The position numbers and the translations under genes were made by a program. The notes beneath the pieces were generated by a model. The model was given only the letters and a program-made list of their open reading frames with translations. It made no database searches and had not been told where the DNA came from. A DNA stretch of 64,000 bases from Ascidiella aspersa. Lineage: Eukaryota. The stretch lies in the NCBI GenBank assembly GCA_963924565.1, contig OZ004607.1:12276001-12340000 (forward strand), written 5' to 3'. Positions 58,801 through 64,000 of this stretch are shown piece after piece (positions within the stretch are counted from its first letter, which is position 1; each line of letters opens with the position of its first letter).

Positions 58801-60890
58801 ATACGTAAGAGTCAAGGTTTCCGCACATTGTGAAATTTATTGACATTCTGGTAGAATCTTTTTGGCCGAAAAACGAAAAGCTATTTTTTTTTGTTTTATG
58901 CGTTACTTTATAACTAAATTTTGTGATGTCATTTCAAAGAAATGCATTCGTCCCTACTTTTTTTTAAAGACTCCTTTTTATTTCGGATTGCGCCACTGAA
59001 TGTATCTGTGTTAAATCCGCATTTGAGAGTATAATTAATTTATCGCATCTTAATGTTTAAACCAATTTTATCGCATGGAAACTTAACAACGAGGTCAGCT
59101 GTTCTTTAAAAAACTACAAACCAGAACGTAGGCTTTGTCTTCTTTCAGGGCTGAATTTTGTGACGTCATTTCAAAGAAATGCATTCGTCCTGATATTTTG
59201 CAAGACTCTTTTTATTTCTGATTGAGCCACTGAAAGTATTTATGTTAAATCCATTTGAATAACAATATAATTAAATTATCACGTCTCAATGTTTAAAGTT
59301 AAACCAATTTTATAGCGTGAAAAAAACACTTAACAATGAGGTCAACTGTTCTGTAACAAATTAAAACCAACAAGTAGACTGTGTCTTATTTCAGGGCTGT
59401 CCAGACAAGAGTAGCAACTTGCGTTTCCGTCACGAGCAGTGCGCAGAGTTCAACAACGTCCCGTACAGGAACAACACCTACTCGTGGTTGCCGGTAGATA
59501 GCGCTAGTGAGTAAAATGTTTAGAACGTGTTTGTGGCGAACACATTAAACTTTTATCTTGAAAGGCCGGATAACTGTTAGGACTTTTGATCGCGGTTAAA
59601 AAAAAACAGTTTTATGTCGAACTTTCCTAACTTAATTTTCGATAACGAAGGAAATGTATTACTATGCAAACAAAAACTGTAGTGAGCTGAATCGTCGTTT
59701 AGTTTAAAATCCCTTAATTTGGAATGACATTGGACAACATTACAACTGTAGTTATCTTTATTAAGAGAATATTTTTCAGGCCTAGATAATTATCTCTGCT
59801 GGCCGTATTTGGCCGCTGGTCGTAATTTGGTGACTACTTTATTAGTGCAACGTAGCATTGACAACCATATTTCTGTTCAGTCTACCCTTGCGAACTTCAC
59901 TGTTACACGAAAGCTGGTAAACGGACGTTCGCCGACCGGTTACGCGATAAGGTCGTGGATGGAACCAAGTGCTACAGCAACGCGGACGACATCTGCGTCG
60001 ATGGTGTTTGTAAGGTATGATCTTTTTAGAAAATAGGTAGAATGGTATAGGTAATATTTGCAATATCAGACTTGATTTCCGTTAATTTATGTTACTTATT
60101 TCTAATGGAAAATTTTGTGCTTTCGCCAAATTATTTGGCTTTATTTCTCCTTATTAACAATGTTATGTGCAATAACTTTTTCATGATGCTGGCGAAGCTG
60201 ATTTATTGTGTTAAACGCATTGTTTCTTGTTGTCGCACCATAAGTTGTTGTATCATGTACAACAATAAAATATTTCACAGTAAAAAATAACGTTTTTTTC
60301 TGTTTTTGTAGCGTTTAGGTTGTGACCAACGCATCGACTCCTTTGCGCGCGAAGATAGGTGTGGGGTGTGCAGGGGAGATGCCACGTCATGCAGTGACGT
60401 CACCAAGACATTTAACCGCACACGCGGCGAAGGTATGGCGATAAAAAATATATTTATTCAAAATACATAATTATACAGATGTTTTCATTAAACTGCTTTA
60501 GAGACAAATTAATTGTTTAAGTGAAAGTTCTTTAGAGGCTTATTTTTAAGTGTTCGTCGTTCTCTTATTTTACCTTTATTTGTTGTTTACGTCTATCTGG
60601 GTTTTAGTTTATTCCGAAAGTCCGACTTTTTAACAATGTTTTTTACTTTTAAAATAAAATTTGTTAATAAAGGTATAAAAATAGCTGAGGCGGAGGTCGA
60701 ATATTTTAGTTTTACTATGTACACTTCTAATTCGTGTTTGTGCGCTACAGCATATGTGAGTGTCGGAATCCTGCCAATGGGAGCCCGCAACATTAAAGTA
60801 CACGAAGTTAACGCTTCGGAGAACTTTCTCGCCCTCAAGAATCCAAACAAAGATGGAGAGTATTACCTGAACGGAGATTACAAGATAAGG
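28677..60890 (+). CDS. ADAMTS7/12: ADAMTS7/12-like secreted metalloprotease, 5' part (continues beyond the window)
   Basis: Phase-consistent exons: 28677-28860, 30141-30399, 30689-30884, 39079-39226, 42305-42400, 42846-43084, 44286-44369, 48880-49004, 49495-49644, 53590-53733, 56759-56909, 57314-57406, 58358-58567, 59395-59506, 59881-60014, 60312-60432, 60751-60890. Signal peptide, prodomain, furin site [23 protein letters not shown] (ADAMTS7/12-type), HELGHNFAMHHD, Met-turn [22 protein letters not shown], Cys-rich and spacer regions. Confidence 0.95.
30141..30399 (+). CDS. ADAMTS7/12: ADAMTS prodomain exon ([14 protein letters not shown]...RRKRD...VYFKL)
   Basis: gacag|...ag|gtaat; Pep_M12B propeptide motifs. 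Confidence 0.92.
30689..30884 (+). CDS. ADAMTS7/12: ADAMTS prodomain exon ([10 protein letters not shown]...CHYRGHV...VAISTCDGL)
   Basis: tttcag|...|gtgag. Confidence 0.95.
39079..39226 (+). CDS. ADAMTS7/12: ADAMTS prodomain exon ([16 protein letters not shown]...HKVYRR)
   Basis: ccacag|...g|gtttg. Confidence 0.92.
39504..39828. mobile_element. Degenerate hAT-Charlie-type MITE
   Basis: TAATGGTGCTCAAA ... TTTAACACCACTG flanked by agttagat / gtctagat. Confidence 0.5.
42305..42400 (+). CDS. ADAMTS7/12: ADAMTS prodomain exon ending FCGVR
   Basis: ttacag|...g|gtaag; cysteine-switch-like CGV. Confidence 0.85.
42846..43084 (+). CDS. ADAMTS7/12: ADAMTS exon with furin site RVRR and start of the catalytic domain ([16 protein letters not shown]...LTIVNM)
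   Basis: ttctag|...|gtgag. Confidence 0.94.
44286..44369 (+). CDS. ADAMTS7/12: ADAMTS catalytic exon [28 protein letters not shown]
   Basis: tgacag|...|gtaac. Confidence 0.95.
44820..45021. repeat. Interspersed repeat with TCGGAATA units and a TAACCC-like tail (possible non-autonomous Helitron/Helentron-type)
   Basis: Repeated tcggaata/gtcgg units, then aaccct/ctaaccc tract; shares CAAAATAGGACTAATA with ~23795-23810. Confidence 0.4.
48430..48731. mobile_element. Degenerate hAT-Charlie-type MITE
   Basis: CAGGGGTCATTAAACT..GGCCAGATGTGGC left end after gcctagac; AAGCTTGGCGCTCCCTG right end. Confidence 0.55.
48880..49004 (+). CDS. ADAMTS7/12: ADAMTS catalytic exon [19 protein letters not shown]...[10 protein letters not shown]
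   Basis: ttacag|...ag|gtatt. Confidence 0.96.
49495..49644 (+). CDS. ADAMTS7/12: ADAMTS catalytic exon ...[40 protein letters not shown]
   Basis: ttgcag|...aa|gtaag; HExxH. Confidence 0.97.
53330..53505. mobile_element. hAT-Charlie-type MITE with an internal GTAATT-repeat fragment
   Basis: TIRs CAGTGATTCCCAACC / GGTTGGAAAACACTG; perfect TSD GTCTAGGA. Confidence 0.88.
53590..53733 (+). CDS. ADAMTS7/12: ADAMTS catalytic exon [12 protein letters not shown]...VMAP...[14 protein letters not shown]
   Basis: ttgcag|...ga|gtaag; third His and Met-turn. Confidence 0.96.
53985..54476. mobile_element. hAT-Charlie-type MITE
   Basis: TIRs CAGGGGTGTCCAAC / GTTGGACACCCCTG; perfect TSD CTTTAGAT; GGCACG subterminal repeats. 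Confidence 0.92.
56759..56909 (+). CDS. ADAMTS7/12: ADAMTS exon CLVDQP...[17 protein letters not shown] (disintegrin-like)
   Basis: tttcag|...|gtgcgt. Confidence 0.95.
57314..57406 (+). CDS. ADAMTS7/12: ADAMTS exon NICNRLWC...[11 protein letters not shown]
   Basis: ttccag|...|gtaat. Confidence 0.94.
57959..57994. repeat. 9-bp minisatellite (AAAGTCTGG)x4
   Basis: Read directly from the sequence. Confidence 0.9.
58358..58567 (+). CDS. ADAMTS7/12: ADAMTS central thrombospondin type-1 repeat exon
   Basis: atttag|WCFGGAC...[17 protein letters not shown]...[16 protein letters not shown]|gtaag. Confidence 0.97.
58917..59399 (+). repeat. Diverged tandem duplication (~240 bp x2) ending in the 3' splice site
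   Basis: AATTTTGTGA(T/C)GTCATTTCAAAGAAATGCATTCGTCC starts both copies; both end TGTCTT(C/A)TTTCAGGGCTG. Confidence 0.9.
59395..59506 (+). CDS. ADAMTS7/12: ADAMTS Cys-rich exon [20 protein letters not shown]...
   Basis: tttcag|...a|gtgag. Confidence 0.93.
59881..60014 (+). CDS. ADAMTS7/12: ADAMTS Cys-rich exon PCELHC...KVVDGTKC...ICVDGVCK
   Basis: gttcag|...|gtatg. Confidence 0.95.
60312..60432 (+). CDS. ADAMTS7/12: ADAMTS exon [27 protein letters not shown]...
   Basis: ttgtag|...g|gtatg. Confidence 0.95.
60751..60890 (+). CDS. ADAMTS7/12: ADAMTS spacer exon [19 protein letters not shown]...NFLALK...YYLNGDYKI
   Basis: ctacag|...|gtaagt; spacer incomplete, so the gene must continue past 64000. 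Confidence 0.95.
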
Positions 60891-61344
60891 GTAAGTTACA
60901 GGCTAAATTTCGCATCGTTCCATTACAGGACTTGCAACAGGACTCTACGTGAACACCTTGACAATTTCGAGTTTCCTTGTTGTCTTAAAAAGTTCAATAT
61001 ACGAATAAATATATTTTAGAATCGCATATAATGCTGTCATAAAGTAAAAGGGTAACATTTATACATTTGAATCATGTAGCTGAGGTCCCAAGTTTAAATT
61101 TCAATATCTCATAGTCTCTTGAAGGATTCCGATGCTGGGTGGTACGAGTCACGTTATCGTTGGTCAAAAGGACGGCTTCTCAAGTGATATATTGCCGTTG
61201 TTGTTCATGTAGGACATGTGTGTGTGTGTGTGTTTTATCGACTTGATGCAGTACTGCAGACCTTATTCAGTATAGAGTTGTTTGTACTAACAGGATGCGG
61301 CAGGCAATGTTGTCAAAGTTGGTTGTCCACTTGCTCCCCACCAA

Positions 61345-62109: not shown

Positions 62110-62477
62110 AGGTGGCGTTTTTAGACATCGCTTGACAGGGTTAAGCGGTTGTCCGACAGAATTATACCGGGAGGAATTCAGCCCTGCGTAGATTTTTGTC
62201 TCGTATCGTACTTTGATGACCCCGGCTTGTTTCGCTTGGGATGCAGTGGCGGCTTGTGCATCGCAACTTTCACCTTAGATTGCGGTTCGACCTTTGGCGT
62301 AATAGTTGTTGCCGCTTTTACGCACTTCAACAGGTTTACGTGGTTCCGGTGGCCCGGGCTTCAAACCGGCGTTGTCGGCAACGCGCTCCTTCAAGGATCT
62401 GCGACGCACGGTTCTGCCGTGATTCCGTGCAACGATATCGGCTGCGGCGATTTTTTGCTGCACATCAGCTCTTTCGC

Positions 62478-63787
62478 TCAACGTAACGCCGACTGCTTCA
62501 GTGGATTTTGATGCATGGAAAAGACTGGCGCGTGCTGTAGAGGTTCTTTCACTCTTGAAGTGTTGCTGTTTAGCAACACTGGATCTCGGTAATGGTCATT
62601 CTTGCTACGTTGGCCTGTTCTAGTTAGAGTGCCATTTTGAAAAGCGTATTCATCCTCTTGGTTGTTGGGTCTCTGGGAAGATCCTCTGTTGGATGATTGC
62701 ATTTTTTGAGCAGCAGAAATGTTCCCGATTTGCTTTGGCGGCACAGGTTCCTTTTGAATTATTTCAACGGTTACTTTACATTGTTGAATTGGTGAAAGAA
62801 CATTTAAGTTGGCTTCTCGACTTTTTTTTGTTGTACCGCATAATATCTGCGCAGACTGTCGGTTGGCAATTCGCCTCATTCGCGCTGCTGAAAACTTGTT
62901 GCCTTGCTTGGGTGGTGTGGGCGCAACGATATACTTAGTGGATGATGATATTTGTTCTGTTTGAAGCGGTGAACGCGAGGTATGCTTGGTAGATTTCACC
63001 GTTTCTTTACAAATCTGCCCTCTATTTGTAGTGCGCGTTTTGTGCTGGGCAAAACCAAGTTTGCTTTGCCTAATTGAAGCAGATTCCTGGTGGTTTAAAA
63101 CGTTTGCAGAGGGAGATGTTGCGTATTTATTTTGCGTAGTTCCATTTGTGTTTTCTTTCAACAAAGATTGACGCTTTAAAATTCGTCTTTTCCGAGCTGC
63201 AGACATTTCCCTGTCTTGCGTTGGTGGTCTGGGTTCTTTGTATTGCTTAACGACACTCGCTGCTGAATATTTCTCGCTTTGAACTTTAGCTGGATTAACT
63301 TCTGTGATTTCCTGTTTTTTGCATAAGTTGAGTTCAGATTGGCGCTTGAGAATTCGTCTTTTGCGTGCTGCAGATAAATTCCCTTCGTGACTTGGTGGGA
63401 CAGGGGCCATCATCGGACCACAAATAGTTGTTTGCCGACGCGCACTTTGAATTCTCTTGAACTTTTTCGCAACACACGATTCATTACTTGTTTTTAACGT
63501 GGCCGTTGGAGGCTTATAGCTGAAGAGAGTGTTGTCCTTAGAGAGGCAGGTTTTAATTTTGTGAGGTGTTTGAGTCTGACAAGGCTTGGAGTTAAGCTTA
63601 ACAAGCTGGTCAACAGTTTGCGGTTTTAAAGCAGCGTTGTTTGCTTTCTTCGATGCAGTGTCTTTTGATGACAGTGGTTTGACATTTGGGATGGTGGAGC
63701 TTTCCTTGACTTTCTCAGGAGAAACTTGGATGGTTTTCAAACACTTCGGCGCTAATCTTTTCTTTATAACCACCAGTGGATTTATAT
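62478..63787 (-). CDS. Large coding exon of an uncharacterised basic, K/S/T/Q/P-rich repeat protein nested antisense in an ADAMTS intron; 5' exon(s) probably outside the window
   Basis: More than 430 open codons in an AT-rich genome; minus-strand acceptor ttttattcacag| at 63788-63790, phase 1; four internal PxPP-x4/5-SAAR(K)RRI(L)KRQS-like repeats; AT-rich 3'UTR-like sequence further downstream. Confidence 0.75.
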
Positions 63788-64000
63788 CTGTGAATAAAAT
63801 TTGCCAATTTTAGCAGAGTAACGACAAATCCAGATATTTGTGACATTCCGATTGGCACTAAATGAAAACTGCTAGCGAATATTTTTTTCGTAAACGGACA
63901 ATATTTAGTTAAATATTTCAGGAATTTGTGCACCAAATGATTGACAGCTGTTTCACTGAATTAAGATACATCAAGCTGCTGGCACAGCAGGACATATAAA

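What the first reader, a model, noticed from the sequence alone, without database searches (positions are those of the whole stretch)
62478..63787. Nested antisense gene in an ADAMTS intron encoding an unrecognised protein with a repeated PxPP...SAARKRRILKRQS module
Seen: more than 430 open codons on the minus strand, inside the intron after the first ADAMTS spacer exon, with a good acceptor (ttttattcacag|) and no ATG at its start, so it looks like the last exon of a spliced gene. The protein is basic and low-complexity but has four spaced copies of a ~24-aa module: APVPPSHEGNLSAARKRRILKRQS (aa123-146), EPRPPTQDREMSAARKRRILKRQS (180-203), APTPPKQGNKFSAARMRRIANRQS (284-307), EPVPPKQIGNISAAQKMQSSNRGS (342-365). 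SAARKRRILKRQS is identical in copies 1 and 2 while the linkers are unrelated, which suggests selection on the motif. I do not recognise the family. Inference: a Pro-rich hinge plus a basic amphipathic helix ending in an RQS kinase site would fit a phospho-regulated microtubule-, calmodulin- or nucleic-acid-binding repeat, perhaps in sperm or cilia. This is the best candidate for an undescribed system in the window.
Basis: partly seen in the sequence, partly recalled or inferred. Interest (0 to 1): 0.75.

Follow-up and report, generated by a model that had tools for sequence, protein, structure and literature searches.

The report
Kinase tail exon inside ADAMTS intron
The long minus-strand open frame is real and transcribed, but it is not a separate unknown gene: it is the last exon, a basic repeat-bearing tail, of a 16-exon protein kinase gene lying backwards inside an ADAMTS intron.

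Summary
Observation confirmed. The open frame, the acceptor at 63787 and the four PxPP...SAARKRRILKRQS modules are all there. Stranded RNA reads splice into 63787 from the minus strand (30 reads).

Interpretation partly right. The gene is antisense and nested. ADAMTS spacer hits lie on both sides, and the arrangement recurs in three tandem ADAMTS copies. It is not an unrecognised stand-alone protein. Fifteen upstream coding exons, beyond the window end, encode a Ser/Thr kinase domain and a conserved ~190-aa middle domain with no Pfam or PDB match. All exons keep phase into the tail: 1170 codons in the reference, 1271 to the ancestral stop.

The reference copy carries a +2 and a -2 indel, which cause the stop at 62478. 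The -2 is absent from 8 of 15 RNA reads and from the DNA contigs of two other runs.

Module cores evolve at dN/dS 0.11-0.16 against 0.66-0.70 for the linkers. Strong module matches occur only at six paralogous loci, within a family matched at 32 places, about 28 loci. Outside this genome, only unnamed metagenome ORFs match the middle domain.

It is not a transposon. Module function is untested. Other readers of this scan noted the same stretch, and similar giant kinases elsewhere in this genome.

The parts
62181..63787 (-). Terminal exon (tail exon) of the kinase gene. The part laid with reads starts at 62181; transcription continues below it into the 3' UTR.
   Evidence: joint L021 1607>1944 (CT..AC on +, which is GT..AG on -) in 30 reads. 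Depth per 200-nt bin from L021 1 to 1600 is 17.3, 3.9, 7.5, 17.6, 46.2, 32.5, 40.3, 50.2. Nearly all first mates lie on +. Window coordinate = L021 position + 62180.
62478..63785 (-). Open frame of the tail in the reference allele (436 codons from the exon's first full codon, including the TGA at 62478-62480).
   Evidence: frame f2 of the exon; 2206 nt of upstream coding exons plus 1304 nt gives 1170 codons.
63336..63410 (-). Module 1 (MAPVPPSHEGNLSAARKRRILKRQS)
   Evidence: L001 2356-2430; E 4.1e-13.
63165..63239 (-). Module 2 (KEPRPPTQDREMSAARKRRILKRQS)
   Evidence: L001 2185-2259; E 2.3e-11.
62853..62927 (-). Module 3 (VAPTPPKQGNKFSAARMRRIANRQS)
   Evidence: L001 1873-1947; E 1.3e-12.
62679..62753 (-). 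Module 4, degenerate in this copy (KEPVPPKQIGNISAAQKMQSSNRGS). Paralogs keep SAARKMRIANRRS or SAARKRRTSRRRS.
   Evidence: E 1.8e-10.
62579..62580 (-). Two extra bases (+2) relative to paralogs B, C and D. This shifts the frame and produces the stop at 62478.
   Evidence: An X1 contig covering this place has 4 gap letters and 3 paralog-like substitutions, so that allele may lack the +2. This was not shown directly.
62307..62308 (-). Two bases missing (-2) relative to B, C and D. The site is polymorphic.
   Evidence: 'AG put in behind' L021 127 in 8 of 15 RNA reads and in all X1 and X2 contig depth.
62383..62430 (-). Conserved C-terminal basic motif (ARNHGRTVRRRSLKER). It lies out of frame in the reference allele but in the homologous frame of the paralogs. 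More distant family members have a related motif in the same position.
62178..62180 (-). Ancestral stop codon of the tail, shared in position with B and C.
   Evidence: 1271 codons.
60744..60953 (+). Host gene: first ADAMTS spacer exon, the upstream boundary of the intron that holds the kinase gene.
   Evidence: 44.7 bits, model 11-80; E 9.5e-12.

Best explanation
Shown: window 62181-63787 (-) is the 3'-terminal coding exon of a 16-coding-exon gene on the minus strand. The gene runs from its ATG at window-equivalent 68298 (C1:12344298) to its stop. It lies wholly inside the roughly 8.1-kb intron that splits the spacer domain of a plus-strand ADAMTS gene.

The protein has four parts:
- a divergent basophilic-type Ser/Thr kinase domain (exons 1-6);
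- a conserved ~190-aa middle domain of unknown fold (exon 8);
- short Lys-rich linker exons;

The tail is built from old, diverged ~60-aa repeats. Each repeat keeps a 25-aa module: a K/A-x-P-x-P-P hinge, an invariant Ser that may cap a helix, an A-A-R-K-R-R-I-x-x-R-Q stretch, and a final Ser/Thr.

The gene was duplicated at the DNA level as a whole gene with its introns and flanks. It was then triplicated together with its ADAMTS host.

Inferred (about 0.3-0.4): each module ends in hydrophobic(-5)-x-K(-3)-R(-2)-x-S. That is the consensus of PKA and CAMK-type basophilic kinases, and it overlaps an RKRR nuclear-localisation-like cluster. The modules most likely act as a multisite phospho-switch. 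The kinase itself or PKA would phosphorylate the terminal Ser and weaken the basic helix's binding to an acidic partner such as importin, nucleic acid, tubulin tails or calmodulin. Alternatively, the modules may act as tethered pseudosubstrates.

Whether the tail is included appears to depend on removal of a 353-nt intron in exon 9. That intron is largely retained in the RNA sample examined.
For: Structure of the gene:
- Similarity between paralogs extends about 5 kb upstream of the ORF, and the upstream ORF pieces are kinase-like.
- Pfam Pkinase scores 33.7 and 57.8 bits on two exons, against a cut-off of 31.7.
- RNA reads give 14 GT..AG (minus-strand) joints, with first mates on +.
- Every exon is open in the frame required by the previous one, and the arithmetic closes at 1170 or 1271 codons.
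- For the internal intron, exon 9a+9b is 257/251/257/260/293 nt in five copies, all 2 mod 3. The intron lengths are 353/348/348/375/367 nt and vary mod 3.

Nesting.

Coding constraint on the tail:
- The frame is open for 543 codons in B, C and D and for 421 in E.
- Tail dN/dS is 0.43-0.66.
- Module cores are at 0.11-0.16 and linkers at 0.66-0.70, with equal dS. Fisher p = 2e-5 and 9e-6.
- The two identical cores differ at 5 nucleotides.

Module distribution: all 24 matches at E <= 4.8e-5 lie in the six loci A, B, C, D, E and P.

Tail pI is 10.2-10.5.
Against: - The splice that removes the 353-nt intron is not among the 14 joints shown (4 more were hidden). Depth inside that intron is 10.4, about the same as the neighbouring exons (10.9-18.7). 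Other introns show 1.1-1.2.
- In this sample, therefore, many transcripts would stop 44-64 codons into exon 9 and would not translate the tail.
- The reference allele has two frameshifts and a degenerate fourth module.
- The functional reading of the module rests on motif consensus recalled from general knowledge, not on any test.
- The tissue of the RNA run is unknown.
Confidence: 0.85

Rival explanations
1. The tail is made mainly as a separate product, or not at all. Transcripts retain the stop-bearing 353-nt intron, so the kinase protein ends after the middle domain. The tail would then be 3' UTR, or be translated from an internal start or a shorter transcript. This is closest to the reader's picture of an independent protein.
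For:: depth in the intron (10.4) is about equal to the flanking exons, and no joint for it is listed. 19 loose-end reads from copy C also run into it. The retained form stops after 44-64 codons in all five copies.
Against: The spliced exon sum is 2 mod 3 in all five copies while intron length varies. The donor is conserved in A, B, C, D and P and the acceptor in all six. Phases close to the tail. The only in-frame ATG in the block is absent from D and E (alignment). Selection on the tail shows that it is translated.
Confidence: 0.08
2. The window copy is a decaying duplicate. Its reference allele is a truncation, or a pseudogene in the making, for the last ~100 residues. The intact function would reside in paralogs B, C and D.
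For:: +2 and -2 indels in the reference; module 4 has lost its basic core in A only; another copy (C3:22020036) is already a pseudogene with 10 stops.
Against: The A-specific part of the tail is only about 82% identical to B and C, yet it is transcribed at depth 4-18 by reads at least 95% alike. The -2 is absent from 8 of 15 RNA reads and from both other runs' contigs. A-B dN/dS is 0.52 and A-D is 0.58, no higher than B-D at 0.62. All 15 upstream exons are open.
Confidence: 0.15
3. The ORF belongs to a transposable element that inserted into the ADAMTS intron.
For: Several copies exist in the genome.
Against: The ORF has no Pfam hit. The upstream conserved pieces that were scanned match only kinase families. 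The copies are whole multi-intron genes. Similarity ends about 300 bp upstream of the ATG and about 600 bp past the stop. There are only six copies of the tail. The three on C1 are explained by tandem duplication of the host.
Confidence: 0.02

Closest known systems
CAMK-like (CAMKL) Ser/Thr kinases: MARK1-4, BRSK, SIK, AMPK, CIPK
   Same: These are among the nearest solved chains for the kinase pieces. MARK3 scores E 3e-13 on a 164-aa piece, MARK3 is top for the N-lobe exon, and MARK1 and CIPK23 are near the top for the catalytic-loop exon. The gene has the VAIK Lys, an H-R-D-L-K-P-D-N catalytic loop, an APE motif, and an acidic residue at the position that favours basic substrates.
   Different: Greatwall (an AGC kinase) scores as well or better, because of DLKPDN. 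No UBA or KA1 domain is present. DFG is replaced by DLG. Matches are weak: the 164-aa piece scores at best E 3.9e-14. A ~190-aa middle domain without Pfam or PDB relatives follows the kinase.
TSSK (testis-specific Ser/Thr kinases)
   Same: Other first readers of this scan called the gene TSSK-like. From my own memory of TSSK sequences, the C-lobe and the stretch after the VAIK Lys do look similar. This is recalled, not tested.
   Different: TSSKs are short (about 270-370 aa) and have neither this middle domain nor this tail. No TSSK chain appeared among the PDB hits listed (best 60 of 780, 8, 27 and 1), and the word search found no named relative. Membership is therefore open.
Nested (intron-hosted) antisense genes
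   Same: A complete gene with its own promoter region lies on the opposite strand inside one intron of a host gene. It was co-duplicated with the host.
   Different: Nesting is not ancestral to the kinase gene. Paralogs on C3 and C9 have no ADAMTS spacer or TSP1_ADAMTS hit nearby.
Basophilic kinase phospho-acceptor sites and classical monopartite nuclear-localisation signals
   Same: The module core has K-R-x-S with a hydrophobic residue at -5, and an R-K-R-R cluster. The consensus is recalled from general knowledge.
   Different: Here the site sits in a fixed 25-aa module with a PxPP hinge and an invariant upstream Ser, repeated 4-5 times in the kinase's own tail. The motif strings were found in 0 papers.

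Membership tests
Protein kinase superfamily (Pfam PF00069) | Profile match above the curated cut-off | tested here: met
   33.7 and 57.8 bits on two exons (cut-off 31.7). The last kinase exon scores 15.4 bits, below the cut-off on its own.
Protein kinase superfamily (Pfam PF00069) | Catalytic motifs: Gly-rich loop, VAIK Lys, HRD..N loop, DFG, APE | tested here: met
   GGGATG, AIK, AHR|DLKPDN (split by an intron) and APE are present. DFG reads DLG, a known variant (recalled).
TSSK subfamily | Closest named relatives are TSSKs in a kinase tree or best-hit list | tested here: inconclusive
   no TSSK chain among the PDB hits listed (the bank may hold none); only 2 unnamed metagenome ORFs. No named kinase set was available for a tree.
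MARK/AMPK-related (CAMKL) kinases | UBA or autoinhibitory domain after the kinase, and/or a C-terminal KA1 domain | tested here: not met
   Pfam finds nothing in the middle domain or in the tail.
Transposable-element ORF | Transposase, RT or integrase domain; terminal repeats; many dispersed copies | tested here: not met
   no such domain in the pieces scanned; six loci; the unit is a gene with flanks. Terminal repeats were not searched for explicitly.
Nested gene in an ADAMTS intron | Host exons of one domain on both sides, on the opposite strand | tested here: met
   spacer model positions 11-80 at window 60744-60953 and positions 57-100 at C1:12345102-12345233, both on +. The kinase gene spans C1:12338178-12344298 on -. 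The host splice across this intron was not seen in reads; plus-strand RNA depth was about 0.
Known RNA family for the conserved intronic block | Rfam match or conserved secondary structure | tested here: not met
   0 Rfam matches at E <= 1; consensus energy -1.51 kcal/mol, 6 pairs.

The most novel reading that the evidence does not exclude
This genome may hold a family of about 28 loci encoding giant kinases of an undescribed type. The type would combine a divergent CAMK/TSSK-like catalytic domain, a ~190-aa domain with no known relatives, and a tail of ~60-aa repeats carrying a PxPP-basic helix-Ser phospho-switch module. Tail inclusion would be gated by a detained intron. That intron carries a ~200-nt primary-sequence element conserved across the family, better than most of the coding sequence.
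Probability: 0.2. Interest if true: 0.6.

Novelty: new variant of a known kind. Interest (0 to 1): 0.35.

Why it matters
The 'orphan' ORF now has an explanation. That removes a candidate for a wholly unknown system. It also shows how a tool-less reading of a window edge can miss the catalytic half of a gene.

What remains is of moderate interest:
- A kinase family matched at 32 places in this genome, with a conserved middle domain. Outside this genome, that domain has only six detectable relatives among 1.84 billion representative proteins, all unnamed metagenome ORFs.
- A short linear module under strong purifying selection inside an otherwise nearly neutral tail.
- A possible splicing gate, a retained intron with a family-wide conserved element, that decides whether the tail is made.

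All three can be tested with ordinary experiments.

Tried and rejected
Searches that gave nothing:
- Pfam on the tail at E <= 10: nothing.
- Tandem Repeats Finder: 0 rows.
- Word search of the intact paralog's tail against 5.8 billion clusters: none at E <= 0.001 among 8000 candidates scored.
- Word search with a 164-aa kinase piece: 2 unnamed ORFs out of 18 candidates, which says nothing about subfamily.
For the stored homologue P0001 it gave only scores of 0.87, below the useful range.
- Middle domain against PDB (profile, E <= 10) and Pfam: nothing.
- Rfam and RNAalifold on the conserved intronic block: nothing.

Reading the intronic block as coding was rejected. The open frame through it in the C9 copy corresponds to a different frame from that in the C3:20.09 Mb-type copies, and copies A-D have stops (my reading of the translations).

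Positive selection was rejected as the cause of the divergent second half of A's tail. dS is also raised there (0.316 against 0.089), with dN/dS 0.52 in both parts. The identity mosaic fits gene conversion.

Papers: three searches. I saw listings and abstract starts only and read no paper. The motif strings occur in 0 papers. I did not ask for any supplementary files. I built no joined spliced protein. All searches were done exon by exon, and phase closure was checked by length arithmetic only.
Full report
OBSERVATION. The minus strand of the window carries an open frame from 62478 upward. The ORF listing gives 431 aa from a GTG at 63773, and the stop-to-stop frame is 443 codons. There is no ATG near its 5' end, and the sequence 'ttttattcacag|AT' sits at 63788/63787. 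Pfam finds nothing in the frame at E <= 10. Tandem Repeats Finder finds no DNA-level repeat.

IT IS THE LAST EXON OF A KINASE GENE. A six-frame search of the window's own genome (308.6 Mb, 75 contigs) found paralogs:
- two on the same chromosome, 38.5 and 70.9 kb further on (83% and 80% identity; copies B and C);
- one on C3 (58%; copy D);
- a stop-ridden copy on C3 (copy P);
- one on C9 (36-39%; copy E).

In B, C and D the frame is open for 543 codons. blastn of 20-kb stretches showed that similarity between copies runs about 5 kb upstream of the ORF on the gene strand. In the most distant copy that upstream part is better conserved than the ORF itself. The conserved upstream ORF pieces read as a protein kinase. 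Pfam Pkinase scores 33.7 and 57.8 bits on two of them, against a cut-off of 31.7. I reached this before looking at earlier notes of the scan. Those notes, read as titles only, also speak of a giant 'TSSK-like' kinase whose kinase domain and 'orphan ORF' splice together.

RNA EVIDENCE. One RNA run of the same species label (X3, raw reads, about 6% of the run read) and two runs kept as contigs (X1, X2) were laid on C1:12338181-12344180.
- 1002 RNA reads lay on it, and almost all first mates are on the + strand.
- All 14 RNA-supported joints read CT..AC on +, which is GT..AG on the minus strand. This confirms minus-strand transcription independently of the library type. A fifteenth listed joint (CT..TC) has no RNA reads and comes from one X2 contig.
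- Five small exons (84, 89, 71, 60 and 66 nt) precede the tail. Upstream of these are a 608-nt segment, the 578-nt middle exon, and the kinase exons.
- Loose-end consensus letters at six places were searched in the copies. Five match copies B and/or C; one (L021 2699) matched none. So B and C are expressed too, and some depth on A comes from them where identity is high.
- The second half of A's tail is only about 82% identical to B and C. Depth there is 4-18 from reads at least 95% alike, so copy A itself is transcribed.

READING FRAME. Translating each exon separately, every exon is open in the frame demanded by the one before it. The exception is the 608-nt segment, which has stops in all frames.
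- That segment contains a 353-nt intron with a CAG|GTATTTAC donor and a CACTTTCAG| acceptor. The donor is conserved in copies A, B, C, D and P, and the acceptor in all six.
- With the intron removed, the two exon halves sum to 257/251/257/260/293 nt in A, B, C, D and E. All are 2 mod 3.
- The intron lengths are 353/348/348/375/367 nt and vary mod 3, as expected of a true intron. The E donor picked by my pattern is not GT, so the E numbers are approximate.
- By length arithmetic alone, the ATG at window-equivalent 68298 is followed by 2206 nt in 15 exons. Adding the tail gives 1170 codons to the reference stop, or 1271 to the ancestral stop, in 16 coding exons.
All searches were exon by exon.

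A CAVEAT ON THAT INTRON. The joint that removes it is not among the 14 shown (4 more were hidden). Depth inside it is 10.4, against 10.9-18.7 in the adjacent exons and 1.1-1.2 in other introns. Much of the RNA in this sample therefore retains it, and the frame then stops after 44-64 codons.

Inside this intron, a block of about 200 nt is conserved in all tail-bearing copies. nhmmer detects it in 13 of 14 family loci tested: E 2e-12 or better in 12, 2.5e-4 in L028, none in L029. It has no Rfam match and no consensus structure. The frames in which it happens to be open differ between paralogs, so I read it as a non-coding primary-sequence element, possibly regulating intron detention. That reading is speculation.

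THE REFERENCE STOP IS ALLELE-SPECIFIC. Aligned with B, C and D, copy A has two extra bases at about 62579-62580 and lacks two bases after 62307. The +2 moves the homologous reading into another frame, so the original frame soon hits the TGA at 62478. After the -2 the homologous frame returns and ends at 62178-62180.

The two missing bases are present in 8 of 15 RNA reads and in all contig depth of X1 and X2. An X1 contig across the first site has four gap letters and three paralog-like substitutions. This suggests, but does not prove, that this allele also lacks the +2.

NESTING.
- The ORF at window 60636-61019 (+) matches ADAMTS_spacer1 positions 11-80 (E 9.5e-12).
- Positions 57-100 match at C1:12345102-12345233 (+), 5.1 kb past the window end (the ORF is).
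- TSP1_ADAMTS repeats follow.
- The kinase gene (C1:12338178-12344298, -) lies between the two spacer hits.
- The same order recurs in copies B and C, so the ADAMTS-kinase unit was tandemly triplicated.
- No spacer or TSP1_ADAMTS hit lies near the C3 or C9 copies, so nesting is not ancestral to the kinase gene.
- The host's own splice across the intron was not observed. Plus-strand RNA depth was about zero.

SELECTION AND THE MODULE.
- Nei-Gojobori dN/dS for whole tails is 0.43-0.66.
- When the sites are partitioned, the cores of modules 1-3 give 0.11-0.16, the hinges 0.21, and the remaining 445 codons 0.66-0.70, all at the same dS. Fisher p for non-synonymous differences, core against rest, is 2e-5 (B-D) and 9e-6 (A-D).
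- Within copy A, the identical cores of modules 1 and 2 differ at 5 of 39 nucleotides.
- An alignment of 15 modules gives the consensus K-x-P-x-P-P-K-Q-x4-S-A-A-R-K-R-R-I-x-x-R-Q-S. The first hinge Pro, the first Ser and the Arg at -2 from the end are invariant. The last residue is Ser or Thr in 12 of 15.
- A profile of the module finds 24 matches at E <= 4.8e-5, all in the six loci (4, 4, 4, 4, 5 and 3 in A, B, C, D, E and P). Nine weaker matches have E 0.02 to 6.3. One is in P, and two lie in the tail exons of more distant family members.
- Those distant members have 190-430-aa tail ORFs with degenerate PRPPKQ-basic modules and a shared C-terminal basic motif.
- Module spacing is 60-67 aa in E. 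It is 57, 104 and 58 aa in A, so the tail is an old array of ~60-aa repeats.
- The raised A-B divergence in the tail's second half comes with raised dS (0.316 against 0.089) and unchanged dN/dS of 0.52. Together with the identity mosaic, this points to gene conversion elsewhere, not to positive selection here.

FAMILY AND RELATIVES.
- The 191-aa middle exon is 54-96% identical among the five intact copies.
- A profile of it finds 32 matches, about 28 loci, in this genome. A kinase exon lies about 1 kb upstream at the loci where one search also reports a match.
- Against 1.84 billion representative proteins it finds only six hits, with E from 2.6e-14 to 2.5e-4. All are unnamed ORFs from ENA or JGI metagenome assemblies.
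- Metagenome contigs fetched with the best of these hits carry the same exon layout in another eukaryote, with GC 0.41-0.43 and longer introns. Their 384-aa downstream ORF is acidic and lacks the module.
- The middle domain has no Pfam or PDB relative.
- For the kinase pieces, the nearest solved chains are Greatwall, MARK1-4, CaMKK2, CIPK23, RSK, SGK and phosphorylase kinase.
- I recall that the C-lobe resembles TSSKs. No call could test that, so subfamily membership is left open.

MECHANISM (INFERENCE). The tail is basic (pI 10.2-10.5, 80-110 Lys+Arg) and of low hydrophobicity. Each module ends in a site with a hydrophobic residue at -5, Lys at -3 and Arg at -2. This is the recalled consensus of PKA and CAMK-type kinases, and it overlaps an RKRR cluster of the nuclear-localisation type. 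The catalytic loop keeps an acidic residue (DLKPDN) at the position that favours basic substrates (also recalled).

My best guess, at about 0.3-0.4, is a multisite phospho-switch or tethered pseudosubstrate in the kinase's own tail.

VERDICT. It is a new variant of a known kind: a protein kinase with an undescribed middle domain and tail module. Interest is moderate to low for the finding as stated. The family-wide features noted in passing are the more interesting part.

Noticed in passing
L021 2913-3265 (C1:12341093-12341445; window-equivalent 65093-65445, beyond the window end): A 353-nt intron inside exon 9 of the kinase gene is largely retained in RNA (depth 10.4 against about 1.1 in other introns). 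It holds a ~200-nt block conserved at the nucleotide level across 13 of 14 family loci tested. The block has no Rfam match and no consensus structure. The retained form truncates the protein before the tail.
   Followed up: partly
G000:C1:12336744-12421016: The ADAMTS gene and its nested kinase gene are tandemly triplicated, with units about 38.5 and 32.4 kb apart. Identity between copies is a mosaic, from 100% down to about 60% in 200-nt windows, which suggests gene conversion.
   Followed up: partly
G000: e.g. C3:12099432-12134469 (5 tandem copies), C7:8740831-9047821, C1:10197271-10821700, C6:20728750-20911050: About 28 loci pair a divergent kinase exon with the same ~190-aa middle domain. 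That domain has no Pfam or PDB relative and only six unnamed metagenome relatives outside this genome.
   Followed up: partly
G000:C3:22019939-22024635 (L005, L007): A pseudogene copy of the tail-bearing kinase. It has 10 stops in the tail match, 12 in the middle exon and 1 in the catalytic-loop exon.
   Followed up: no
L030-L035 (metagenome contigs Ga0210059_1001159, Ga0210059_1004783, JGI24159J19872_10020124 and others): Another, unidentified eukaryote in JGI metagenomes has the same kinase plus middle-domain gene with the same exon layout, but with an acidic 384-aa downstream ORF in place of the basic modular tail.
   Followed up: partly
G000:C3:33862291-33871959: A single 3380-aa open frame carrying many TSP1 repeats turned up among the TSP1_ADAMTS hits.
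   Followed up: no
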